Below are positions 3,833-30,717 of a stretch of 64,000 nt of DNA, one piece after another. How positions within the stretch are numbered: the stretch's first letter is position 1; each line of letters starts with the position of its first letter. The position numbers were made by a program, and so were the translations under genes. The notes below the pieces were generated by a model. That model was not told where the DNA came from and did not search any database. It was given only the letters and a program-made list of their open reading frames with translations. Where the stretch lies: IMG/VR virus record IMGVR_UViG_3300048008_000449, positions 124,001 to 188,000 of that record; one strand, written 5' to 3'.

Positions 3833-4517
3833 TTATAGTTTCCTTTGCGTACATTAATTTCTTTTTCCATTTATGTAAAGGTTCAGTACCTAAATGTTTT
3901 ATAACGTTTTCATACTCTTGCTGATCATATTTAAAAAGTAATTTATCAACATCAACTTCAACTACAGTATGGTTTTCTTTAATGATATTAATTGCTCTAT
4001 CACTTTTGTTTTTTTGTTCTATAGTGTTTCTATAAATTTCTTCGTATTGACTTTCGTCTACTGTATTCAATAACATTAATCGTCTTGTTATCTTATTATA
4101 AAATTCTGTATTTTCTAAAGGAGTGGATAAATGATATATTACATTAGTACTTATGATGTCCATATGACCTAAACTAACAAATCTTTGTGGTGAATGTATT
4201 TCTGGCTTTACTAGCAATTTAGTAAATTCTGTTTTATCTCGCCATTTAGTATTTGTTTGTTCTTGTAACACATTATTAACATGTGTTTCCCAAGACATAT
4301 CTTTAATAAACCATCTATGATAATCATCAGGTCTAAAATGAAAAAAGTCTCCTTGACCTTTATCGTTATATTCACCATCTTCTGTAATTTTCTTTACTGT
4401 GAATCGAGGACGCAAAGGCGCCATTGCAAAATCTTTATGTAGATTAAACAACCATAAAAATGTATTTCCGTAAAATCCTTGTGTATGTAAACATACGTGA
4501 CATTCAATTTGTTTCAT
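3825..4517 (-). CDS. hypothetical protein, paralog of 3062..3832
   Basis: Same motifs as above plus shared MSWE/KxHV block. Confidence 0.7.
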   Translation of the reverse strand: MKQIECHVCLHTQGFYGNTFLWLFNLHKDFAMAPLRPRFTVKKITEDGEYNDKGQGDFFHFRPDDYHRWFIKDMSWETHVNNVLQEQTNTKWRDKTEFTKLLVKPEIHSPQRFVSLGHMDIISTNVIYHLSTPLENTEFYNKITRRLMLLNTVDESQYEEIYRNTIEQKNKSDRAINIIKENHTVVEVDVDKLLFKYDQQEYENVIKHLGTEPLHKWKKKLMYAKETINE

Positions 4518-20718: not shown

Positions 20719-20911
20719 TTTTGTTCTCCGTTGCTATCATTAAACATGTTTCGCTTGCATAAGTTTTAAAATAACGTGGAGCGAAAGCATGTACAAATAC
20801 TGCCATTGATGCTCTTTTTAAACTCCATGCAATACTTATTGCATGTTTAAAATGTTGCCAACGTGTCATGTTAGCTTCTTCTAAATGTAGTTTACATTGT
20901 TTACTGTACAT
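20711..20911 (-). CDS. small hypothetical protein
   Basis: HLEE..MT.WQHF..A......VHA..P pattern. Confidence 0.7.
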   Translation of the reverse strand: MYSKQCKLHLEEANMTRWQHFKHAISIAWSLKRASMAVFVHAFAPRYFKTYASETCLMIATENKND

Positions 20912-22104
20912 TAATTATTCCTTGCCATGTTTGCCGCTGTAAAGCCTGCTCTATTAACAAGTTTAACATCTTTGTCAACTACATAACCTTCTCCGCCACG
21001 TTGTCCATTTGTATATGATTCTACATCTGCGTCTTGTGCGTCTAAAGTTTTGATGACTGTATTTTTAACTTTCATAATTCCTTTAATAAAATTAAAAGTT
21101 GCATTAAACCCATCTATGTTACTATTTATGTATTCTAAAAGACGAGCTTGTTTTGGTTTTGATAATTTACTTCCTTCAACATACTTTTGAAATGTACTTC
21201 CTAAATTATCTAAGTTACCTGCTTTTACACTATTATTAATATAAGCATAAAGTATCTTACCAAAGTCTGCCATTTTTAATTCTGCTGGTACTGCAAACAA
21301 TTTATCTATTGCTTGTGCATTTTTATCTAAATAATTCTCTAATTCGTCTATTGCTGGAATATCTACACCTGGTGATTTTTGTACCATTACAGGTGGCATA
21401 ATATATGTTGGTCCACCTTGGAATTGTGACATATCAACTTTACTCTTTTCGCCATCAAGTCCAATTGACATGTGTACTACGACACCTACGTCACTGTCTG
21501 TTATTTTCTTTCCAACTTCGCTATCTACTTTAACCTGATATGTTGTTGTATTAGGAGTGAATATATATTTGTTTTCTTTTACGTCTGGCGTTGTAAACCA
21601 TAGTAAGTCACCCATTACATATCCTCTAAAATCACTTGGTACAGTTGCTTCTACTTTATCCCAGATACTTCTCATTTTACCTGCGAATGCTTTATAGTTT
21701 GCCGCTTTAGTAGCATCAGGATTGCTTGCACCAGGACGATTGAATAACATTTTTTCTAAGCCTTCAGCACTAGTTGGTTTACCATCATATCCTTTAGCAG
21801 TAAATCCACTCTTATCTGTTAATATAAACTCGCCTTGTTCATTACGACCAAATATAACGGCCGGAGATCCATCCCATTTAATAGTTACTGTGTTAGGTTG
21901 TTGTTCTACTTGATGTAGTGTAGCAATTGCTTTTCTTGCACCCGCTGAAGCATCCCATAGAATTAAGTCTTCTAAATGCTGAATACGTGCATCTTCACGT
22001 AGCTTTTTAGCTTCTGGTTGGAATAAATCTTTTCCAATTAATCTATGTAGTCTAGAATTTCTAGGCTTACGCTTTTTGCTTCCTACAATATCTGTTATTT
22101 TCAT
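20911..22104 (-). CDS. phage protein with RNA-ligase-like nucleotidyltransferase motifs
   Basis: TIKWDG (motif I), GDLLW (III), GEGYV (IV), VKLVNR (V). Confidence 0.6.
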   Translation of the reverse strand: MKITDIVGSKKRKPRNSRLHRLIGKDLFQPEAKKLREDARIQHLEDLILWDASAGARKAIATLHQVEQQPNTVTIKWDGSPAVIFGRNEQGEFILTDKSGFTAKGYDGKPTSAEGLEKMLFNRPGASNPDATKAANYKAFAGKMRSIWDKVEATVPSDFRGYVMGDLLWFTTPDVKENKYIFTPNTTTYQVKVDSEVGKKITDSDVGVVVHMSIGLDGEKSKVDMSQFQGGPTYIMPPVMVQKSPGVDIPAIDELENYLDKNAQAIDKLFAVPAELKMADFGKILYAYINNSVKAGNLDNLGSTFQKYVEGSKLSKPKQARLLEYINSNIDGFNATFNFIKGIMKVKNTVIKTLDAQDADVESYTNGQRGGEGYVVDKDVKLVNRAGFTAANMARNN

Positions 22105-22387: not shown

Positions 22388-23791
22388 CTAACTATTACTT
22401 CTTTTGAGCATACTGCGAAGTTTATCATGCCCTGTTATAGTGTTTTCAACAACACTATTCTCAGCAATGTTCTTTTCTTGGTGTGTTGTTTTGTTTTGTG
22501 CCTTAATTTTCTCAAACATAGCACTAGGTTGATTCATTGTAGATCCTGCTTCATCGTCATCTAAGTCCTCAATACGTAAGCCTGATATATCAAATTTTAA
22601 GTCTACTTTTTGTCCAACACCGCTACTACTACGTGTTTTCATAAACTGAATTTGATAACGCCCACGTTCACGCATAGCTTGGCTTGTAAAAATACCAATT
22701 ACGTTATCCGCTGTTTGAATCTTACTTAAACCACCAGCAATATGAGAATGATCAAATTCTACTTCTTCTACAGCCGCTCTGTTTAGCTGTGATGCTGTAG
22801 CAAATAGTAAATCATGTTCTACTGCAAAGTTACGCAATTCTTCAGATACAAACTTATCTTTAATAAACAAATCACTAGGATTAACTTTGCTCTGTGCTGG
22901 CATCATTAAGTCTAAGTAATCTATACAAATTGCATCAATTTTAATATCGTTCTTAACTTCATATTCACGTAAGTAACTAGTAATAGCATTGATTGTAATA
23001 CCATTTGGTAATTGTACAATTTGTAATTTACCTGCATTTTTACCTTGCATACGTACTTTTAAATCTACGTCATCTGCATTTTTAAATACGTCACGTGTAT
23101 TCATTCCTGTTAACATACTATCTAATCGCATACTACATAGTTCTTCACTAAGTTCTAAACTAATGTATACAACATTCAAGCCTGCTAGTGCCCAATTTAA
23201 TCCTAAGTTTTGTAAGAACAAACTCTTACCACCACCTGATGGTGCAGCAAATATATTCAATTCACCTCTATTAAATCCACCATATAGTTTCTTATCAATT
23301 TCTGCCCAACCTGTACTTGTACCGCCACGCTGATTACGTACTCTTTCAATACGTTCTGCAGGAGATTCCCAATAGTCTGTTCCCATATGTTTAGCAAGTC
23401 CAATTTGTACTGCTTCTTTTACCATACGTTCTACTGGTCCATAATCACCCTTTTCCAATAAATCTGCACTTTTTAAAATTGCCGCTTCTAATGCTTTATG
23501 TTTACAAAATACTTCAAACTCATCAATAAACCATTTCTTATGTCTATCATCTACGTCTTTTAATTCTTGTAATTCTAATCCTGTTGTTGCTACAATTTGT
23601 TCTAATGTAGGTAATGCACTATATCCAGTTGCATGTTCTTTTATAAACTCTACACCTTTACGTAATTCTCTATCAAAGTATTCAGGATCTAATATGCCGT
23701 TTACCCTAGCAAATAAGTCTTTATCTTGTGCTAAAAATTCTACAAACAATCGTTGTAGATCTATATTATATTCTTTTGCTTGTTCTGTCAT
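22388..23791 (-). CDS. replicative DnaB-like helicase (T4 gp41-like)
   Basis: APSGGGKS Walker A, ISLEL, IDYLDLM, TASQLNR, KTR; ATGA-coupled to primase. Confidence 0.93.
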   Translation of the reverse strand: MTEQAKEYNIDLQRLFVEFLAQDKDLFARVNGILDPEYFDRELRKGVEFIKEHATGYSALPTLEQIVATTGLELQELKDVDDRHKKWFIDEFEVFCKHKALEAAILKSADLLEKGDYGPVERMVKEAVQIGLAKHMGTDYWESPAERIERVRNQRGGTSTGWAEIDKKLYGGFNRGELNIFAAPSGGGKSLFLQNLGLNWALAGLNVVYISLELSEELCSMRLDSMLTGMNTRDVFKNADDVDLKVRMQGKNAGKLQIVQLPNGITINAITSYLREYEVKNDIKIDAICIDYLDLMMPAQSKVNPSDLFIKDKFVSEELRNFAVEHDLLFATASQLNRAAVEEVEFDHSHIAGGLSKIQTADNVIGIFTSQAMRERGRYQIQFMKTRSSSGVGQKVDLKFDISGLRIEDLDDDEAGSTMNQPSAMFEKIKAQNKTTHQEKNIAENSVVENTITGHDKLRSMLKRSNS

Positions 23792-24801
23792 TTGCAATAC
23801 TTTCTCATTAATAGTTCAATTTTAGTTGAATTCTTTTCAGCACTATCTATTATACTTGTTATTGTATACAATCTTCCGTATTTTGTCAAGGCATCACTTG
23901 CATCTTTACAATCTTTCCACTCGGGAAATGCTACCATCCAACCATTTTTTATAGCTGATTTACACATTAATTTACCAGCTTCATCTGCGTCTGGTAATAC
24001 TATAATTTGTTTTTCTAAGCTATGTAATATGTCTGCTTGTTCGTCATTTATATTATTACTACCAATTGCACAACCATCTGTAACAATAGCATCAAGTTGG
24101 CCTTCAGTTACAATAACAAACTGTTTATCACTGGTTTGTTTATCTAACCCATATACAAAGTCTTTTTTAGGTTGCTGATTATAGTATTTAGGCATTCCGT
24201 CAGGAATATTGTTTCCTGCCCATCTTGCTGTATAACCAACTACTTTACCTTTATATGTAAATGGTAATATAAATCTTTTATTTACTCTTCCATGCTGTTT
24301 ACTAGGACTCCACATAAATCTAGAATCTGTTACATCGAATCCTCGATCTGTTAAGTATGCTACTGCTTCTGTCCAATCTGCATTTGGCTCTGTAAATTCC
24401 ATAAAAGGTTTTGCATCATCAGGAAGTTTTTTCTCATCCCAATCAATAACTAAATTTTTACGTTTTTCAGTTTTTATTAATAATGTTTCTACGTCTTGTT
24501 CACGTAATAGTTCTAACTGTATACGTTGTATATCACTCTCATCAGCACCAAGTGTAACTAACAAGTTTTTTAACCTTACTGTAATTTTACTTTGTGGACT
24601 CCAACCTGTTTTATAGTTGCAATTAAAACAATTATACTGAAATTTATCATCATCAAATAAGAACCCACCTCTGCCTTTCTTATCTGGTCTTGCTTGTCCA
24701 TTACGTACACACATAGGACAGTTACCGCTAATCCAACCACTAGGGCTAGACCGCCAATTAACCGGAACCAGAGTTCTCACGTATTCATTCATTAAAGCCA
24801 T
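23788..24801 (-). CDS. DNA primase (T4 gp61-like)
   Basis: Zn finger CPMC...CFNC; TOPRIM motifs VTEGQLDA, PDAD, KDASDA. Confidence 0.93.
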   Translation of the reverse strand: MALMNEYVRTLVPVNWRSSPSGWISGNCPMCVRNGQARPDKKGRGGFLFDDDKFQYNCFNCNYKTGWSPQSKITVRLKNLLVTLGADESDIQRIQLELLREQDVETLLIKTEKRKNLVIDWDEKKLPDDAKPFMEFTEPNADWTEAVAYLTDRGFDVTDSRFMWSPSKQHGRVNKRFILPFTYKGKVVGYTARWAGNNIPDGMPKYYNQQPKKDFVYGLDKQTSDKQFVIVTEGQLDAIVTDGCAIGSNNINDEQADILHSLEKQIIVLPDADEAGKLMCKSAIKNGWMVAFPEWKDCKDASDALTKYGRLYTITSIIDSAEKNSTKIELLMRKYCK

Positions 24802-24836: not shown

Positions 24837-25644
24837 GTGTTCCTGTAGGTTGAGTGTGTTTTGTTCTAATATATTTGACATTTGTACGGAATGTCCATGG
24901 ATCTATGCCAGTGTGCCCGTTATATGGGTAGAATGGTTGTGTATATGTACCTAATGTAATATCAAACCAATCATCTTCTGTTGGGTTATCGCTTAATGCA
25001 CCCTGTACCCAAAAGTTACCAGTATATCCTGTTCCGTAAACAGCAATAGTAATAAGACCGTTTGGCTTATTATAATAACCAGTTGCACGTAATGCACTAC
25101 TAAAGTAATATGTGTCTGTGTTGATTATTTGTGTAGTAAATGAATCATTAATTTGTGTAGTAAGTGGTAATGCATCGCCTTCTTCTGAACACTCAACTGT
25201 ATAATTAGGTCTCATATTCAAATCACAATACATAGGAACTACTAAGCCCTTGTCAGTTGTGTAACTAAAAACTAAGTCATATAACCCTTGTGAAAATAAA
25301 CTACTTTCACCACTAGTTATTACTACTTTCACAGATCCTGCATCATAATCAGTTATTATTGCTTTTTTACTTATTACTGTTGATCTATCGCCTCTGTCAA
25401 TTAATGATACTTGCATTGTTGTACCATGAAGCATAATAGGTTTTCTATCTTGATTTTTTACAAAGAAGAAAAACTCAGTATCAAACCCACGAAATAGTTT
25501 TAAAAATCTATAATTAACTGGACTATTAACGGCAGTACCTTTAGCACTTGCATATTTTCCTAATCCTGGTGCTGAACCATGATCCTCTAATGCGTATAAT
25601 TCGCCTGTTTGGTTTATATTATATGTTGTTCCGTAATTTGACAT
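24811..25644 (-). CDS. putative structural protein (beta-rich)
   Basis: 277-aa ORF; GGAG RBS; ATAAATA at 25664. Confidence 0.65.
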   Translation of the reverse strand: MSNYGTTYNINQTGELYALEDHGSAPGLGKYASAKGTAVNSPVNYRFLKLFRGFDTEFFFFVKNQDRKPIMLHGTTMQVSLIDRGDRSTVISKKAIITDYDAGSVKVVITSGESSLFSQGLYDLVFSYTTDKGLVVPMYCDLNMRPNYTVECSEEGDALPLTTQINDSFTTQIINTDTYYFSSALRATGYYNKPNGLITIAVYGTGYTGNFWVQGALSDNPTEDDWFDITLGTYTQPFYPYNGHTGIDPWTFRTNVKYIRTKHTQPTGTLDKVIVRV

Positions 25645-25707
25645 GTGTTAGACTCCTGTATTGTATTTATCAAATACTACCAGATTTTGAAAGCATAAAT
25701 AGATGTA

Positions 25708-26079
25708 ATGCAAACGAAACATCAGAAACTCTTGGACGAATATCCGTTCCTTACTGTAGTAGAGTATGCTAGCAATGAGTATCTTGGTATAATTCAAAAC
25801 ATAGATAACCATGTTGCTAGTATGTATGTCTACGATCGATTAAACGAAACCTCAGAAAAAGCAAAGTTCTTAGCACTTGGCGAAGAATGGTGGTGGGAAA
25901 CTAATAGAAAGTTACCTATTAATATTGCATTACTTAATAGATGGAATTTCCAATATTGTGTACAAAGTTTTAATGTTAAACAAATGGACGTAATTGCAGG
26001 GCCTGAAGTAAGATTAAGTAATAGCATTACTAAACGTATCAAACGCAGAAGTATTAATCTTGTAAAGAAAAACCAGTAG
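25708..26079 (+). CDS. hypothetical protein (isolated plus-strand gene)
   Basis: 123 aa, LGEEWWWETNRKLPINI; own ATAAATA at 25695. Confidence 0.75.
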   Translation: MQTKHQKLLDEYPFLTVVEYASNEYLGIIQNIDNHVASMYVYDRLNETSEKAKFLALGEEWWWETNRKLPINIALLNRWNFQYCVQSFNVKQMDVIAGPEVRLSNSITKRIKRRSINLVKKNQ

Positions 26080-26638
26080 CAAGCATATTTAATTGTAATA
26101 CAATAGCCATTGCATATGCATGGGCATGTGCTTTCTTAAAATAGTAGTCGCCATTTGTAGGCTTTATCCATACTTCATTATTAATGGTATTCCAATCTTT
26201 ACCAATTAAATATCTTTTGGCTGGTCTAATTACTGCTAATACTGCGGCCATTTGTTCTACACTCTTAGGTTTCATCTGCCCAACAACACCAAAGTGTTTA
26301 TGAATATGAAAACATTGTTCTACAACTTCTTTGTGTTCTAACAATTCCCACATTGGTTCCATTGCTAGTAAATCATCTAATTGTTTCTTAGATTCAATCT
26401 TTTTATATAAGCCAACGTTAAGTATATCAATTTTAAAATATCCCATACTTTCAGCTTCTTTGTGATCAATTGTAGACATACCTGTAAATGGATTGCTAGG
26501 AATGTCATGGAAGTATATACCAGTATTGTGCTTAACTTGCTTGTTATCACGTGCAATCATTGCTGGTATTCCATTAATAATATTAAGTAGCTTATCTCTA
26601 TTTGCTACATCAATATCAATATCTGTGTTTACTATCAT
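26054..26638 (-). CDS. miniature DNA polymerase III alpha (DnaE)-like catalytic core
   Basis: DIDID, HNTGIY, GYFKIDIL, KP..VEQMAAVLAVIRP, YFKKAHAHAY in DnaE order. Confidence 0.8.
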   Translation of the reverse strand: MIVNTDIDIDVANRDKLLNIINGIPAMIARDNKQVKHNTGIYFHDIPSNPFTGMSTIDHKEAESMGYFKIDILNVGLYKKIESKKQLDDLLAMEPMWELLEHKEVVEQCFHIHKHFGVVGQMKPKSVEQMAAVLAVIRPAKRYLIGKDWNTINNEVWIKPTNGDYYFKKAHAHAYAMAIVLQLNMLATGFSLQD

Positions 26639-26721
26639 TTTGGATCCTCGTTGTTCATTTTATACAATAAAAAAATTGGTATTATAAAACAACATAATAC
26701 AAAAAGCAAAGACCATATCAT
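26635..26721 (-). CDS. 28-aa membrane micropeptide (absent from ORF track)
   Basis: MIWSLLFVLCCFIIPIFLLYKMNNEDPK; ATGA overlaps with both neighbours. Confidence 0.6.
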   Translation of the reverse strand: MIWSLLFVLCCFIIPIFLLYKMNNEDPK

Positions 26722-27389
26722 ATAGTTGCTTGCTCCATTATTTCTTTTACCCATTTAGTATCTTGTGGGTTTACTTTCATTGCACGTTCCCAATAATCTA
26801 TTTCTAAATAATCAGTAACCATTTTAATTTGTTCAGGATTAAATCTATCAATTAATCCTTGCGCCGCATTACTATTAAATAGTACCCATGGCGAAATCTT
26901 TCCACTACAAATATGAAATACTGCTAAATTAGGTGATACTATTTCAAAATAATTATTATATGTTGTATTGTTTTCTTTTGCCCAGTTTTGTAAAAATAGT
27001 ATTGTACGTTCTACTGCCCTATCTACTGTCTCAGTTCTTAAACGTTCTTTCATCCATGATGTAAACTGTTTATCTTTACACCAATGGTCAAGTCTTACTT
27101 GGTTTCTTACTAACCAAGTTGCGTAAGCCGGAACATCATCGATACCAATGTCGCGACAATAATAACCAAACTTACAGAAGCCAATATAGTATTGACTCTT
27201 TGCAAAATCTTCGTAGCTTTTTTCATTCTTTGAATTTGTTCCTATTTTATAAAATAATTGAAATGCTCTAAAACCAAGTTGAACATGTTGTTCTCCTTTT
27301 TGCATAAATCTACGTTTCTGTTCACACATATGAACAGCTAGTGTACTTTCTTTTTTAAATGTTTTAGAACAGTATCCGCATTTATACAT
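26718..27389 (-). CDS. zinc-finger protein
   Basis: N-terminal YKCGYCSKTF......HMC C2H2/C2HC-type finger. Confidence 0.75.
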   Translation of the reverse strand: MYKCGYCSKTFKKESTLAVHMCEQKRRFMQKGEQHVQLGFRAFQLFYKIGTNSKNEKSYEDFAKSQYYIGFCKFGYYCRDIGIDDVPAYATWLVRNQVRLDHWCKDKQFTSWMKERLRTETVDRAVERTILFLQNWAKENNTTYNNYFEIVSPNLAVFHICSGKISPWVLFNSNAAQGLIDRFNPEQIKMVTDYLEIDYWERAMKVNPQDTKWVKEIMEQATI

Positions 27390-28050
27390 TAACAGTTTCC
27401 TTTTTCCAGAAAGGATCAGTCCAATTCTCTTTTAAGTTTTCTGGTCTACTAACTTTCATAGTATATAACGAGTTATTAATCAAGTCAACATATTTTTCTG
27501 TTGGTTGTCCAGTCCATGGAGCACCTATACATAATGTGACTTTTTCTTCTGTACCTGGCTCAAGTGCATGTGGATGACTACCATCCAATACATATGTAGT
27601 ATAATTTTGTGGAATATAAACTTTATTATCTTTCTTATCTATAAAATACAATTTATCAACATTACCGTTTAACACGATTCTAAATTTATGTTGCAGTGAT
27701 CCTATTTCATCAACCTTACTATCTAAATGTACATTTAATCCATAGTTTGCTGGCGTTCTTAAAATAGTAACTCTGCCAACTGGTTCCATCCATGGAAATA
27801 CTTTTTCTTTTAAAAGTTTTTGTGTAAATGTCCAATTCTGTGCAGGTTTGGTATATGCAAACTCTCCATATCTTGTATTTTTGCCTTCTGCTTGTCCGCC
27901 AAGTTGACCTTCTGCATTAAATACAGGTAGCATCTTGCATCCACGAAATTCGTTATAATGCCAGTAACTATCATCAACTGACATTACTTCATTATACATA
28001 GCTTTTCTATCTTCATCTGTTATATTTAGATCTAAAGCCGTAAACGTCAT
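27382..28050 (-). CDS. 2OG-Fe(II) oxygenase (Asp/Asn beta-hydroxylase-like)
   Basis: GRVTIL...LNVHLD...SHPHAL...KVTLCI. Confidence 0.7.
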   Translation of the reverse strand: MTFTALDLNITDEDRKAMYNEVMSVDDSYWHYNEFRGCKMLPVFNAEGQLGGQAEGKNTRYGEFAYTKPAQNWTFTQKLLKEKVFPWMEPVGRVTILRTPANYGLNVHLDSKVDEIGSLQHKFRIVLNGNVDKLYFIDKKDNKVYIPQNYTTYVLDGSHPHALEPGTEEKVTLCIGAPWTGQPTEKYVDLINNSLYTMKVSRPENLKENWTDPFWKKETVNV

Positions 28051-29230: not shown

Positions 29231-30682
29231 TTATTGCCAATCAACTTTTTCAATGCTGAATGGATAGTTTGCTTCTTTATAAAACTTCTTACGCTCTGTT
29301 AAGTGTTTTTTGCTAAATTTTGCTGTACTGGTGATGTCCCATATTTGAACATTATCTTTATCTTCTGCTTTACGTATTCCACGACCAATACTTTGAATGA
29401 CTCTAACAAAACTCTTTCCAGGTTCTATTAGTACCAGATTAAAAATACGTGGAATGTTAATTCCTACTGCCGCAACTCCATAAGTTGCTACTACAATTTG
29501 ATTAGTTCCTTCATTAATATTATCATACTGATCTTTACGATCTGTAGTTTTCATTTCTCCACTAACAAAGTTAGCTTGTGGAAGATTATCACAAATTAAT
29601 CCACCTGCTTTAATCCTATCTACTAATACAAGTGTATTGCCTGATGCTGATACTTTTTCAATTAATCCACTTACATATTGCATACGATCTTTATCTGTAG
29701 TAAGATAAGTTAATTCGCTTTGATAATTATTATACTCTGCAAATTCTTTCATTTGCACAACGTTAACATGACATTGACTAAGCACATCCATGCCTTGTAG
29801 TTCGCTTGCACTAAGTTTATTAGTTACATCACCTAAGCATGCTTGCAAACTAACTTTCTCATGATCTGCTTTAGGTATAGTACCTGTTAATCCCCAACGT
29901 AGTGGAATGTTTGCAAATTCTTTAGTAAGTAATTCTTTTAACACATCTGCTTTTGCTTGGTGCACCTCATCTACTATTACACATACAACGTCTTCAGCAA
30001 AGTCTGCTAAACTTAGGTCTGATTCACCTTCTCTAAATCTTTTCTTAATACTATTCAAACTTTGCCATGTACAAATAGTATGAGTTTTTCCTAATTCTTT
30101 TTTATCGCCAAAGTAAACACCAACGTCTAATCCTAGATTGTTATAATCATCAAATGTTTGACGTACTAAATCTTTGTTTGGTACAATAACAATTGATCTT
30201 CCATATGTTTCCACACGTTCGCTAAGTGCCGCGGTTATTAATGTTTTACCTGCACCTGTTGCAATTTCTTGTAAACAATGTGGAGTCTCTAAAAACTTAT
30301 TAACAATCTCAATCTGATAATCACGCAATGTTACTGGCTCACCTGCAACCGGATGTTTTTCTGGCCATAATTTATGTTGAAATGTAGTTTTATCAACTGT
30401 TGGAAAATTAAAATCAAACTTATTTCTTAAGTCATCAATATCAATTTCATATCCATTATCCATAATAGTAGGAAGTACTCTATCAAGTAAATTAATATAA
30501 GTAACACCACCTACTGTAAAGTAACTTTGACATCCATCCCATCTACCTAATTTATATGCTGGCACATGGTATGCATATGGTAAAAAGAACTTTAATTCTT
30601 TCTCACATTTACGGCGGGTATTAACATCAAGACCTTCTATCTTGCAGTTAACTTCATCTTTTAAAACAATTTTACATTTCAT
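29231..30682 (-). CDS. uvsW: SF2 DNA helicase UvsW-like
   Basis: LRDYQ, ATGAGKT, DEVH, GLTGT, QSIGRG; start reassigned to MKCKIV. Confidence 0.92.
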   Translation of the reverse strand: MKCKIVLKDEVNCKIEGLDVNTRRKCEKELKFFLPYAYHVPAYKLGRWDGCQSYFTVGGVTYINLLDRVLPTIMDNGYEIDIDDLRNKFDFNFPTVDKTTFQHKLWPEKHPVAGEPVTLRDYQIEIVNKFLETPHCLQEIATGAGKTLITAALSERVETYGRSIVIVPNKDLVRQTFDDYNNLGLDVGVYFGDKKELGKTHTICTWQSLNSIKKRFREGESDLSLADFAEDVVCVIVDEVHQAKADVLKELLTKEFANIPLRWGLTGTIPKADHEKVSLQACLGDVTNKLSASELQGMDVLSQCHVNVVQMKEFAEYNNYQSELTYLTTDKDRMQYVSGLIEKVSASGNTLVLVDRIKAGGLICDNLPQANFVSGEMKTTDRKDQYDNINEGTNQIVVATYGVAAVGINIPRIFNLVLIEPGKSFVRVIQSIGRGIRKAEDKDNVQIWDITSTAKFSKKHLTERKKFYKEANYPFSIEKVDWQ

Positions 30683-30688
30683 ACTAGT

Positions 30689-30717
30689 ATAATACATTAA
30701 CTTAGACAAAAAGTCAA
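30689..30717 (-). promoter_or_regulatory. sigma70 promoter, probably leaderless uvsW mRNA
   Basis: TTGACT-N17-TATTAT-N6-ATG. Confidence 0.7.

What the first reader, a model, noticed from the sequence alone, without database searches (positions are those of the whole stretch)
26054..26638. 194-aa DnaE: a stripped family-C polymerase core in a T4-like replisome cluster
Seen: five DnaE signature blocks in the correct order in one intact ORF. They are DIDID (cf. PDxDxD), HNTGIY (HAAGVV), GYFKIDIL (GLVKFDFL), KP..VEQMAAVLAVIRP (KP..FEDL.A..ALYRP) and YFKKAHAHAY (GFNKSHAAAY). All three catalytic Asp equivalents are kept. Established: bacterial DnaE is over 1000 aa, these blocks span several hundred residues there, and T4-like phages normally use family-B gp43. 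The internal compression argues for streamlining rather than truncation. It lies near a Zn-finger gene, a gp62-like gene, uvsW, primase and helicase. Inference: a minimal nucleotidyltransferase (primer extension, end-processing or signal synthesis) or the catalytic subunit of a split polymerase.
Basis: partly seen in the sequence, partly recalled or inferred. Interest (0 to 1): 0.75.

Follow-up and report, generated by a model that had tools for sequence, protein, structure and literature searches.

The report
Half of a split mini-DnaE polymerase
This 194-residue phage gene is the metal-binding half of a drastically shrunken, two-gene version of the bacterial replicative DNA polymerase (Pol III alpha); the family was described by computer analysis in 2021, I found no enzyme test of it, and this is one more member of it in a marine giant phage.

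Summary
Window 26054-26638 (-) is an intact 194-aa ORF carrying all five DnaE motif blocks in order, including the equivalents of E. coli D401, D403 and D555.

- **Fold:** the AlphaFold2 model (pLDDT 96) aligns over 188-192 residues with Pol III alpha and PolC (Z up to 10.1; best unrelated chain 3.8).
- **Conservation:** the catalytic residues are kept in 93-94 of 94 diverse homologues, and median dN/dS is 0.14.
- **It is only half of the core.** The first half of the palm, with the invariant GRGS nucleotide-binding motif, is a separate 168-aa gene about 117 kb away, outside the window.
- **The two halves belong together.** The pieces abut at E. coli residues 393/396, co-fold with ipSAE 0.90 (best control 0.02), co-occur in 5 of 5 complete phage genomes tested, and occur naturally fused in three metagenomic proteins.
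- **What is missing.** PHP, thumb, about 90 residues of fingers, tip-of-fingers and tail are absent. A normal 897-aa family B polymerase is present in the same genome.

Iyer et al. 2021 already described this split minimal Pol III alpha in group 2.2 jumbo phages, so this is a new member of a known kind. Catalytic activity and biological role remain untested.

The parts
26054..26638 (-). C-piece of the split minimal DnaE: 194 aa comprising the second half of the palm plus reduced fingers. It is structurally equivalent to E. coli Pol III alpha residues 397-787, without the thumb and without about 90 residues of fingers.
   Evidence: ORF. phrog_11778 at E 1e-64. Profile against PDB Pol III alpha at E 2e-5. 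AF2 pLDDT 96.1. VIA-align Z 10.1 to Taq 3E0D residues 458-845 and Z 8.7 to E. coli 2HNH residues 397-787. Median dN/dS 0.14. Single copy in the genome.
26609..26623 (-). Codons for D6-I-D8-I-D10, equivalent to E. coli D401-F-D403-V-D405. The first two Asp correspond to the catalytic metal ligands.
   Evidence: Sequence read directly. E. coli motif checked on MG1655 dnaE. D6 93/94, D8 93/94 and D10 91/94 in homologues.
26519..26530 (-). Codons for H37-N-T-G40, equivalent to E. coli H511-A-G-G514. They sit just after the point where the thumb (E. coli 433-509) would be inserted.
   Evidence: H37 92/94 and G40 93/94. E. coli motif. Domain bounds from PMC4703070. A beta-hairpin spans residues 24-30 and 33-42 in the model.
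26426..26434 (-). Codons for K69-I-D71, equivalent to E. coli K553-F-D555. D71 is the third catalytic Asp.
   Evidence: K69 94/94 and D71 94/94. HMM alignment to E. coli residues 538-641.
26222..26227 (-). Codons for R138-P139, the end of the conserved fingers helix, equivalent to E. coli R639-P640.
   Evidence: R138 93/94 and P139 94/94. Alignment.
26126..26140 (-). Codons for F167-K-K169-A-H171, the fingers motif equivalent to E. coli F756-N-K758-S-H760.
   Evidence: At position 169: K 75 and R 16 of 94. H171 92/94. At position 170: S 72 of 94. Alignment to E. coli residues 739-767.
26645..26649 (-). Shine-Dalgarno-like GAGGA box, 6 nt upstream of the ATG.
   Evidence: Read from the sequence.
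25708..26079 (+). Conserved convergent 123-aa ORF (phrog_11637) overlapping the 3' end of the C-piece gene by 26 nt. It is a constant companion of the C-piece gene; its function is unknown.
   Evidence: The same arrangement is seen in Atu_ph07, Phosso, 121Q, SCTP-2, Slicko01 and the fused-gene contigs.
23788..24801 (-). gp61-like DNA primase. It is a conserved near neighbour of the C-piece gene across the whole phage group.
   Evidence: phrog_47 at E 3e-31. Synteny.
22388..23797 (-). DnaB/gp41-like replicative helicase.
   Evidence: phrog_19 at E 1e-72.
29231..30709 (-). UvsW-like superfamily 2 DNA helicase.
   Evidence: phrog_16 at E 5e-72. The gene in the same position in phage 121Q is annotated 'helicase (UvsW-like)'.

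Best explanation
The ORF encodes the C-terminal subunit of a two-gene, minimal C-family (DnaE-type) nucleotidyltransferase.

The partner gene. A 168-aa protein is encoded about 117 kb away at G000:C1:32872-33378, minus strand. It supplies the first half of the Pol-beta-like palm with the invariant G-R-G-S-S nucleotide-binding motif. Its residues 78-168 correspond to E. coli 281-393.

What this ORF supplies. It provides the strand carrying the two metal-binding Asp residues (D6 and D8), the strand carrying the third Asp (D71, beside the invariant K69), and a shortened fingers module carrying the R-P and K-x-H motifs.

How the two fit. The pieces meet end to end, with N-piece residue 168 at E. 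coli 393 and C-piece residue 1 at E. coli 396-397. Non-covalently they rebuild the 'palm-fingers' rigid body of Pol III alpha.

What is missing. There is no PHP domain, thumb, tip-of-fingers, clamp-binding motif, OB domain or tau-binding tail.

Inferred, not shown. The heterodimer is a catalytically active, distributive DNA polymerase or primer extender that assists the phage's T4-like replisome. That replisome comprises a family B gp43-like polymerase, a gp41-like helicase and a gp61-like primase. Likely roles are primer extension or hand-off on the lagging strand, or short-patch repair synthesis. It is unlikely to be the main replicase.
For: **DnaE identity**
- PHROG match at E 1e-64.
- The profile hits only Pol III alpha chains in the PDB.
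- AF2 model pLDDT 96.1.
- The top 16 Foldseek hits are all C-family polymerases.
- VIA-align Z 8.7-10.1 over 188-192 of 194 residues, against 3.8 for the best unrelated chain.

**Partner gene**
- Pfam PF07733 match in the genome and in the ORF.
- phrog_11127 at E 1e-43.
- Ungapped alignment of N-piece residues 94-167 to E. coli 319-392.
- Structural alignment of residues 78-168 to E. coli 281-393 at Z 10-11.8 and rmsd 2.0-2.6 A.
- GVGRGSS is invariant in 47 sequences, all at least 50% identical to the query except one fused-protein fragment (32%).

**The pieces work together**
- Complex prediction ipSAE 0.90 in three runs, against 0.02 for the best of 3 controls. That mark was reached by 58 of 80 solved complexes and 2 of 110 mismatched pairs.
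- There are 172-175 contacts, including N-piece residues 165-168 and C-piece residues 4-13.
- Three natural fused proteins of 375-376 aa come from separate datasets.
- In one fused protein, PF07733 runs straight across the junction, residues 97-207.
- 5 of 5 complete phage genomes with a C-piece have exactly one N-piece, 11-182 kb away. Genus tallies in the two tblastn searches are nearly identical.

**Functional constraint**
- D6, D8 and D71 are kept in 93-94 of 94 homologues.
- Median dN/dS is 0.14 over 290 pairs, and 0.05-0.10 against the nearest relatives.
- At least 7955 homologues of about 194 aa exist.

**Accessory rather than main polymerase**
- An intact 897-aa family B polymerase is in the same genome.
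- No PHP and no DnaQ-type exonuclease were found in the 204 kb held.

**Link to priming**
- The C-piece gene lies one to four genes from the primase and helicase genes here and in Atu_ph07, Phosso, 121Q and Slicko01.

**Prior description**
- Iyer et al. 2021, PMC7824862.
Against: - I found no biochemical data for any member of the family in the library searched.
- The thumb is missing. [quoted passage not shown] About 90 residues of fingers are missing too, so templated DNA synthesis is not assured. A palm plus a helical domain is also the layout of non-polymerase nucleotidyltransferases.
- The complex prediction can score high simply because the two chains resemble a solved single-chain fold, as the tool itself warns.
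- Synteny with the primase may only reflect a conserved replication module.
- The genome record is about 56% complete, so the absence of other Pol III parts is not proven for this phage.
- The metatranscriptome signal is only short contigs at low depth, and DNA carry-over is not excluded.
Confidence: 0.85

Rival explanations
1. The 194-aa protein works alone as a self-sufficient minimal nucleotidyltransferase, for example in end-processing or signal-nucleotide synthesis.
For: It carries all three acidic metal ligands and the fingers motifs. It folds confidently on its own in the AF2 model, with pLDDT 96.
Against: - It lacks the G-S triphosphate-binding motif of the Pol-beta-like fold. That motif sits in the separate N-piece and is invariant there.
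- The N-piece co-occurs in 5 of 5 complete genomes.
- The predicted interface has more than 170 contacts.
- Natural fusions of the two pieces exist.
Confidence: 0.05
2. The N+C heterodimer is an active nucleotidyltransferase but not a templated DNA polymerase. It might perform non-templated tailing, nucleotide second-messenger or alarmone synthesis, or nucleotidylation of a protein or nucleic-acid end, for instance as a counter-defence function.
For: - The thumb and much of the fingers are deleted. What remains, a palm plus a helical module, is the layout typical of non-polymerase Pol-beta-fold nucleotidyltransferases (my own knowledge).
- No clamp-binding or exonuclease partner was found.
- The N-piece carries an extra 72-residue N-terminal domain that aligned with no part of the DnaE or PolC chains.
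Against: - The retained fingers motifs (R-P and K-x-H) are those of DnaE.
- The C-piece gene is conserved beside the primase and helicase genes in very divergent phages.
- The best structural matches are exclusively DNA polymerases.
Confidence: 0.12
3. It is a decaying remnant of a captured bacterial dnaE gene, or a non-catalytic structural protein.
For: It is very short compared with the 1160-aa DnaE. Pfam does not recognise the C-piece.
Against: - The ORF is intact.
- dN/dS is 0.05-0.2.
- Catalytic residues are kept in 93-94 of 94 homologues.
- Length is constant at about 194 aa over thousands of homologues.
- The model is high-confidence and compact.
Confidence: 0.02
4. The two halves are joined covalently after translation by a split intein, as in cyanobacterial DnaE, or at the nucleic-acid level.
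For: Split DnaE genes joined by protein trans-splicing are known in cyanobacteria (my own knowledge).
Against: - The N-piece ends at the equivalent of E. coli 393 and the C-piece starts at the equivalent of 396-397. Neither has extra residues that could form intein halves.
- Neither piece has an intein domain in Pfam.
- The contigs laid on the locus showed no joint linking the C-piece gene to distant sequence.
Confidence: 0.01

Closest known systems
Split minimal DNA polymerase III alpha of group 2.2 jumbo phages (Iyer, Anantharaman, Krishnan, Burroughs and Aravind 2021, Viruses 13:63; PHROGs 11127 and 11778)
   Same: - Two stand-alone proteins encoded by distant genes: an N-terminal NTP-binding part and a C-terminal Mg2+- and template-binding part.
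- A family B polymerase is present alongside, and no other Pol III domains are.
- The genome has a T4-like replication core.
- The window protein matches phrog_11778 over its full length and is 34-50% identical to the copies in Atu_ph07, PA5oct, Phosso, 121Q and others.
   Different: - There is no difference in kind. This copy comes from an uncultivated phage that recurs in seawater metagenomes.
- In the passages of that paper I read, these points are not mentioned: three natural fused forms, the exact break point (E. coli 393/396), explicit loss of the thumb, purifying selection, a high-scoring co-fold, and presence in a 141-kb phage.
Bacterial DnaE (Pol III alpha) and PolC, the C-family replicative polymerases
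   Same: - The Pol-beta-like palm has GS, DxD and third-Asp motifs.
- The fingers motifs R-P and K-S-H are kept.
- The predicted fold superposes on the palm-fingers body at Z 8.7-11.8.
   Different: - The two pieces total 362 aa, against 1160 aa for E. coli DnaE.
- PHP (1-280), thumb (433-509), E. coli residues 642-738, tip-of-fingers, clamp-binding motif, OB domain and tau-binding tail are all missing.
- The catalytic domain itself is cut into two polypeptides between the GS motif and the DxD strand.
- The N-piece has an extra 72-residue N-terminal domain that aligned with no part of the DnaE or PolC chains.
Intein-split DnaE of cyanobacteria (for example Npu or Ssp DnaE)
   Same: The DnaE catalytic subunit is encoded by two distant genes.
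   Different: - Here there are no intein halves, so assembly must be non-covalent.
- To my recollection the break lies elsewhere in the protein than the cyanobacterial split; that position was not checked here.
- The protein is minimal rather than full length.
Full-length or PHP-containing DnaE of group 3.2 jumbo phages such as Bacillus phage G, and the 548-aa PHP-less DnaE-like ORF seen here in L089
   Same: These are phage-encoded C-family polymerases.
   Different: - They are single chains with complete PF07733 and finger domains.
- Iyer et al. say the group 3.2 enzymes closely resemble the host enzyme in sequence and architecture.
- The mini version is far more reduced and is split.
Bacillus subtilis DnaE as an RNA-primer extender that hands off to PolC (a functional analogy, from my own knowledge)
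   Same: A second C-family polymerase acts beside the main replicase. The primase-adjacent gene position makes a similar primer-extension role plausible here.
   Different: This is purely an analogy. No activity, primase contact or hand-off has been shown for the phage enzyme, and the main replicase here is family B.

Membership tests
Split minimal Pol III alpha of group 2.2 jumbo phages (Iyer et al. 2021) | A C-terminal piece with the metal-binding Asp residues and the template- or dNTP-binding fingers motifs, as a stand-alone protein of about 190 aa | tested here: met
   194 aa. phrog_11778 at E 1e-64. Motifs conserved. Fold match.
Split minimal Pol III alpha of group 2.2 jumbo phages (Iyer et al. 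2021) | A separate N-terminal piece with the NTP-binding GS motif, encoded at a distant locus of the same genome | tested here: met
   A 168-aa ORF at G000:C1:32872-33378, about 117 kb from the C-piece. PF07733 at E 1e-8 and phrog_11127 at E 1e-43.
Split minimal Pol III alpha of group 2.2 jumbo phages (Iyer et al. 2021) | [quoted passage not shown] | tested here: met
   An 897-aa PF00136 ORF. gp41-like helicase, primase and UvsW-like helicase.
Split minimal Pol III alpha of group 2.2 jumbo phages (Iyer et al. 2021) | No other Pol III alpha domains in the genome | tested here: inconclusive
   No PHP and no RNase_T/DnaQ match in the 204,772 bases held. However, the record is estimated to be only 56% complete.
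C-family DNA polymerase (DnaE/PolC) catalytic core | A Pol-beta-like palm with a GS motif, a DxD motif and a third Asp | tested here: met
   Present, but divided between two chains. GRGSS is in the N-piece. D6, D8 and D71 are in the C-piece.
C-family DNA polymerase (DnaE/PolC) catalytic core | A thumb domain between the two palm segments (E. coli 433-509) | tested here: not met
   There are 27 residues from D10 to H37, against 106 from D405 to H511 in E. coli. A two-residue hairpin turn sits where the thumb would be.
C-family DNA polymerase (DnaE/PolC) catalytic core | An N-terminal PHP domain | tested here: not met
   Neither piece nor the 204-kb record has a PF02811 match. N-piece residues 1-72 are a small domain that aligned with no part of the DnaE or PolC chains.
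C-family DNA polymerase (DnaE/PolC) catalytic core | Full fingers, tip-of-fingers with the clamp-binding motif, OB domain and tau-binding tail | tested here: not met
   The model ends at about E. coli residue 787. E. coli residues 642-738 correspond to only about 10 residues here.
C-family DNA polymerase (DnaE/PolC) catalytic core | Template-directed DNA polymerase activity | not testable with these tools
   I found no biochemical report.
Intein-split DnaE | Split-intein halves at the break point | tested here: not met
   There are no extra residues at the junction. No intein domains in Pfam.

The most novel reading that the evidence does not exclude
The thumb-less two-subunit enzyme is not a helper replicase in the usual sense. 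One possibility is a dedicated primer-maturation enzyme physically coupled to the phage primase-helicase, giving a Pol-alpha-like division of labour with the family B polymerase in a bacterial virus. The other is a non-templated nucleotidyltransferase with a new substrate. In either case its 362-residue core would be the smallest working C-family catalytic module, and an experimental model for the ancestral form of Pol III as Iyer et al. proposed.
Probability: 0.25. Interest if true: 0.7.

Novelty: new member of a known kind. Interest (0 to 1): 0.4.

Why it matters
- **Minimal catalytic unit.** C-family polymerases replicate bacterial chromosomes, yet how small a working C-family catalytic unit can be has, to my knowledge, not been established. 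This family offers one of 362 residues in two chains.
- **Abundance.** It has at least 7955 C-piece homologues in metagenomes. Its N-piece domain (PF07733) has been reported as the only gene unique to the largest marine jumbo-phage cluster that is present in at least half of its members (PMC9123017).
- **If active.** It would show how far Pol III can be pared down, and what a second polymerase does beside a T4-type family B replicase.
- **Experimental entry point.** The natural fused versions found here give a ready single-chain construct for expression and structure work.
- **For genome annotation.** The practical lesson is that the C-piece escapes Pfam and is often labelled hypothetical or given a truncated start, as in Atu_ph07 RefSeq.

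Tried and rejected
- **Direct searches on the C-piece.** Pfam and single-sequence phmmer against the PDB found nothing. Recognition needed PHROGs, a profile or a structure.
- **Model of a fused protein.** I wanted a single-chain AF2 model of a natural fused protein with a deep alignment. MAFFT twice laid the N-pieces onto the C-half (alignments A4 and A5). I modelled the two window-genome proteins separately instead.
- A second was deferred by the tool.
- **N-piece in long IMG/VR contigs.** A search in five long contigs that carry a C-piece found no mini N-piece. These records are 34-60% complete and the genes lie far apart, so this says nothing. Complete genomes gave 5 of 5.
- **Adjacent-gene intermediate.** The ORF just upstream of the C-piece in the closest split relatives of the fused clade is not an N-piece.
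- **Fission or fusion.** The fused clade is nested inside well-supported sets of split-length proteins. This suggests a secondary fusion, but the tree is unrooted.
- **Convergent small ORF.** No Pfam family, and the Atlas lookup was uninformative.
- **Promoter scan.** Matches were not above chance.
- **Literature.** I found no experimental study of the family.
- **Intein-mediated joining.** Rejected; see the rival explanations.
- **Metatranscriptomes.** Only short, low-depth contigs lie on the gene, which is consistent with transcription but not proof of it.
Full report
**1. The observation**

Window 26054-26638 on the minus strand is an intact 194-aa ORF with an ATG start and a GAGGA box 6 nt upstream.

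To avoid relying on memory, I fetched E. coli MG1655 dnaE and read the corresponding stretches.

| Phage residues | E. coli residues |
|---|---|
| D6-I-D8-I-D10 | D401-F-D403-V-D405 |
| H37..G40 | H511..G514 |
| K69-I-D71 | K553-F-D555 |
| R138-P139 | R639-P640 |
| F167-K-K169-A-H171 | F756-N-K758-S-H760 |

Direct Pfam and phmmer-versus-PDB searches see nothing. Three other tests recognise the protein clearly.
- The PHROG family phrog_11778 ('DNA polymerase') matches full length at E 1e-64.
- A profile of 94 diverse homologues hits only Pol III alpha chains in the PDB, at E 2e-5 to 2.5e-4; the next hit is at E 0.67.
- The AlphaFold2 model (90-sequence alignment, mean pLDDT 96.1, pTM 0.88) retrieves only C-family polymerases as its top 16 Foldseek matches.

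With VIA-align, 188-192 of the 194 residues superpose on solved polymerases.

| Chain | Residues matched | Z |
|---|---|---|
| Taq Pol III alpha 3E0D | 458-845 | 10.1 |
| PolC 3F2B | 968-1303 | 10.1 |
| E. coli 2HNH | 397-787 | 8.7 |
| Best unrelated chain | n/a | 3.8 |

**2.

- **Catalytic Asp residues.** They are conserved among 94 representatives that share only 30-51% identity with the query. D6 is kept in 93/94, D8 in 93/94, D10 in 91/94, K69 in 94/94, D71 in 94/94, H37 in 92, G40 in 93, R138 in 93, P139 in 94 and H171 in 92.
- **Selection.** It is purifying. Across 48 distinct IMG/VR homologues the median pairwise dN/dS is 0.14 (290 pairs with 0.05 < dS < 1.5). Against the nearest relatives it is 0.05-0.10.
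- **Palm fold.** A palm fold is predicted.

None of the three refuting outcomes occurred.

**3. What the ORF is: half of a split enzyme**

The window is part of a 204,772-bp IMG/VR virus record estimated to be 56% complete, so the phage is of jumbo size. A genome-wide search with Pfam PF07733 found one hit outside the window. It is a 168-aa ORF at G000:C1:32872-33378, minus strand (L001:1519-2025). The C-piece is single-copy at C1:150072-150629, so the two genes lie about 117 kb apart.

The 168-aa protein matches PF07733 positions 19-94 and phrog_11127 at E 1e-43. It has an invariant G-V-G-R-G-S-S motif, though only among relatives that are mostly at least 50% identical. Its residues 94-167 align without a gap to E. 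coli 319-392. Its AF2 model (pLDDT 88) superposes over residues 78-168 on E. coli 281-393 at Z 10-11.3 and rmsd 2.0-2.5 A.

The N-piece therefore ends at the equivalent of E. coli residue 393. The C-piece begins at the equivalent of residue 396-397. The break falls inside the Pol-beta-like catalytic domain, between the GS nucleotide-binding motif and the DxD strand, with no residues lost and none to spare for an intein.

**4. Evidence that the two pieces form one enzyme**

- **(a) Co-folding.** The complex scored ipSAE 0.90 in each of three runs, against 0.02 for the best of three controls. That mark was reached by 58 of 80 solved complexes and 2 of 110 mismatched pairs. There were 172-175 contacts, and they include the C-terminus of the N-piece (165-168) and the N-terminus of the C-piece (4-13). 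The tool warns that resemblance to a solved fold can inflate such scores.
- **(b) Natural fusions.** The exhaustive representative search returned one 375-aa protein, P0304, among otherwise short hits. Its first half aligns with the N-piece at 46% identity up to the final '...IKEFIK'. A ten-residue linker follows, and then the DxD strand. Two more fused proteins (P0391 and P0392, 376 aa, 78-81% identical) come from other datasets. The fused gene sits in the usual C-piece locus. In P0304, PF07733 runs uninterrupted across the junction, residues 97-207.
- **(c) Co-occurrence.** In all five complete phage genomes I tested that carry a C-piece, exactly one N-piece was found, 11 to 182 kb away. These were Slicko01, SCTP-2, XacN1, Atu_ph07 and 121Q. 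The genus tallies of the two tblastn searches are almost identical for the shared hosts.

A quick tree places the three fused proteins as one clade (SH-aLRT 100). That clade is nested within well-supported sets of split-length proteins, with support of 99 and 95. The nearest split relative has no N-piece upstream. A secondary fusion is therefore the simpler reading, but the tree is unrooted.

**5. What is kept and what is lost**

I used the domain bounds of Fernandez-Leiro et al. 2015 (PMC4703070).

| Domain | E. coli residues |
|---|---|
| PHP | 1-280 |
| Palm-fingers | 281-432 and 510-810 |
| Thumb | 433-509 |
| Tip-of-fingers | 811-928 |
| Tail | 929-1160 |

The two phage proteins together cover E. 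coli 281-393 and 397-787. That is the palm-fingers rigid body and nothing else.
- **Thumb.** D10 to H37 is 27 residues, against 106 for E. coli D405 to H511. This is a deficit of 79, the size of the thumb. The model shows a tight beta-hairpin there, with strands at 24-30 and 33-42.
- **Fingers.** E. coli 642-738 corresponds to about ten phage residues. That E. coli stretch includes the tau-contact region 657-667.
- **PHP and exonuclease.** No PHP domain or DnaQ-type exonuclease was found in the 204 kb available. The record is incomplete, so this is not proof of absence.
- **N-piece residues 1-72.** These form a small alpha/beta domain that aligned with no part of the DnaE or PolC chains and that contacts the C-piece in the predicted complex.

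In total the two pieces come to 362 residues, against 1160 for E. coli DnaE.

**6. Context**

The same genome has an intact 897-aa family B (gp43-like) polymerase.

Around the C-piece gene lie a UvsW-like helicase (29231-30709), a gp61-like primase (23788-24801) and a DnaB/gp41-like helicase (22388-23797). In the cultured phages inspected, the C-piece gene is again followed by the convergent small ORF and lies one to four genes from a primase or primase/helicase gene. This holds in Atu_ph07, Phosso, 121Q and the 141-kb Alishewanella phage Slicko01. A UvsW-like helicase gene is annotated upstream only in 121Q, and a virion structural protein follows the small ORF in the first three.

The 'Zn-finger' neighbour (26718-27389) has only a sub-threshold C2H2 match. 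No neighbour matched a clamp-loader family.

The phage recurs in seawater metagenomes: 14 runs hold at least 87% of the sampled words. Short metatranscriptome contigs 90-99% alike lie on parts of the gene. This is consistent with transcription but does not prove it.

**7. How it most likely works**

Shown by computation: two polypeptides that together have the sequence motifs and predicted fold of the C-family palm-fingers body, under strong purifying selection, always encoded together.

Inferred:
- The N-piece GS motif positions the triphosphate.
- C-piece D6, D8 and D71 bind the two metal ions.
- The R-P and K-x-H fingers motifs contact the incoming nucleotide, as in DnaE.
- Without a thumb, clamp-binding motif or proofreader, the enzyme should be distributive.
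- Because the phage keeps a complete family B replicase, and the C-piece gene sits beside the primase in the very divergent phages inspected, I favour an accessory role. The likely roles are primer extension or hand-off on the lagging strand, or short-patch repair synthesis.

I put the split-enzyme identity at about 0.85-0.9. I put templated DNA polymerase activity at roughly 0.5-0.6. I give the specific primer-extension role no more than about 0.25. A non-templated nucleotidyltransferase function is the main rival, because a palm plus a helical module without a thumb is the layout of many non-polymerase Pol-beta-fold enzymes.

**8. Comparison with what is known**

Iyer, Anantharaman, Krishnan, Burroughs and Aravind (Viruses 2021; PMC7824862) described this system in group 2.2 jumbo phages. 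[quoted passage not shown] They place it alongside a family B polymerase and suggest cooperation in strand synthesis or repair, and a model for the ancestral enzyme.

Weinheimer and Aylward 2022 (PMC9123017) found PF07733 to be the only gene unique to the marine jumbo-phage cluster PGC_A that is present in at least half of its members. RefSeq and PHROGs label both pieces 'DNA polymerase'.

The window copy meets every defining feature of that family that I could test. It fails the full-DnaE membership tests for thumb, PHP and tail, as the family does by definition. It is not an intein-split DnaE. I found no experimental work on any member.

**9. Verdict**

The 'stand-alone stripped core' reading is wrong, because the other half of the active site is a separate gene outside the window.

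The phenomenon is already published, so this is a new member of a known kind.

These details go beyond the passages of the 2021 paper that I read:
- the natural fused forms;
- the exact break point;
- the explicit loss of the thumb;
- dN/dS;
- the high-scoring co-fold;
- the presence of both pieces in a 141-kb phage.

The enzyme remains biochemically untested, which keeps moderate interest.

Noticed in passing
window 25708-26079 (+): A 123-aa ORF (phrog_11637, with an 'EWWWETNR' motif) is the only plus-strand gene in a long minus-strand block. It converges on the C-piece gene and overlaps its 3' end by 26 nt. The same convergent partner accompanies the C-piece gene in Atu_ph07, Phosso, 121Q, SCTP-2, Slicko01 and the fused-gene contigs L007 and L008. 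It has no Pfam family and the Atlas lookup was uninformative. It might be a partner or regulator.
   Followed up: partly
P0304, P0391, P0392; loci L007:1066-2193 and L008:519-1649: Three natural 375-376-aa proteins from separate metagenomes carry the N-piece and C-piece fused through a ten-residue linker. They form one clade nested among split forms. They would make ready-made single-chain constructs for experiments.
   Followed up: yes
L089:133-1779 (-), IMG/VR record of L088: A 548-aa single-chain, PHP-less DnaE-like ORF has a full PF07733 domain and a PF17657 finger domain. It lies next to a gp41-like helicase gene, in a contig that also encodes a mini C-piece 57% identical to the window's. 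It may be an intermediate form or a second acquisition.
   Followed up: partly
L004:3986-4561 (Agrobacterium phage Atu_ph07, NC_042013.1): The RefSeq CDS YP_009611739.1 starts at an internal Met (locus position 4067) and so omits the DIDID catalytic motif. The ORF starting at 3986 includes it.
   Followed up: yes
L093 (Alishewanella phage vB_AspM_Slicko01, OQ508956.1): This 141-kb phage is below the jumbo threshold, yet it carries both pieces about 11 kb apart, with the same convergent small ORF and a primase/helicase gene nearby. The split mini-DnaE is therefore not confined to genomes over 200 kb.
   Followed up: partly
window 26112-26131 (+): A terminator-like hairpin followed by a T-run lies 33 nt after the stop of the convergent small ORF. 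It falls inside the part of the C-piece gene that encodes the conserved K-x-H-x-x-Y motif. One such site is about what chance gives in this region.
   Followed up: no
window 20911-22104 (-): A 397-aa ORF just downstream of the helicase gene contains 'IKWDGSP'. By eye this resembles motif I (KxDG) of ATP-dependent ligases. Its only family match is phrog_455, of unknown function.
   Followed up: no
L001 (G000:C1:31354-34605), around the N-piece gene: By eye only, the neighbours of the N-piece gene look like ClpP-like, GroES-like, RpiB-like and MazG-like proteins. They are not replication genes, so only the C-piece sits in the replication module.
   Followed up: no
window 25600-27400: The locus is held nearly word for word by at least 14 seawater or viral metagenome runs. 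Short contigs (77-270 nt, 90-99% alike) from three metatranscriptome runs lie on parts of the C-piece gene and its neighbours.
   Followed up: partly
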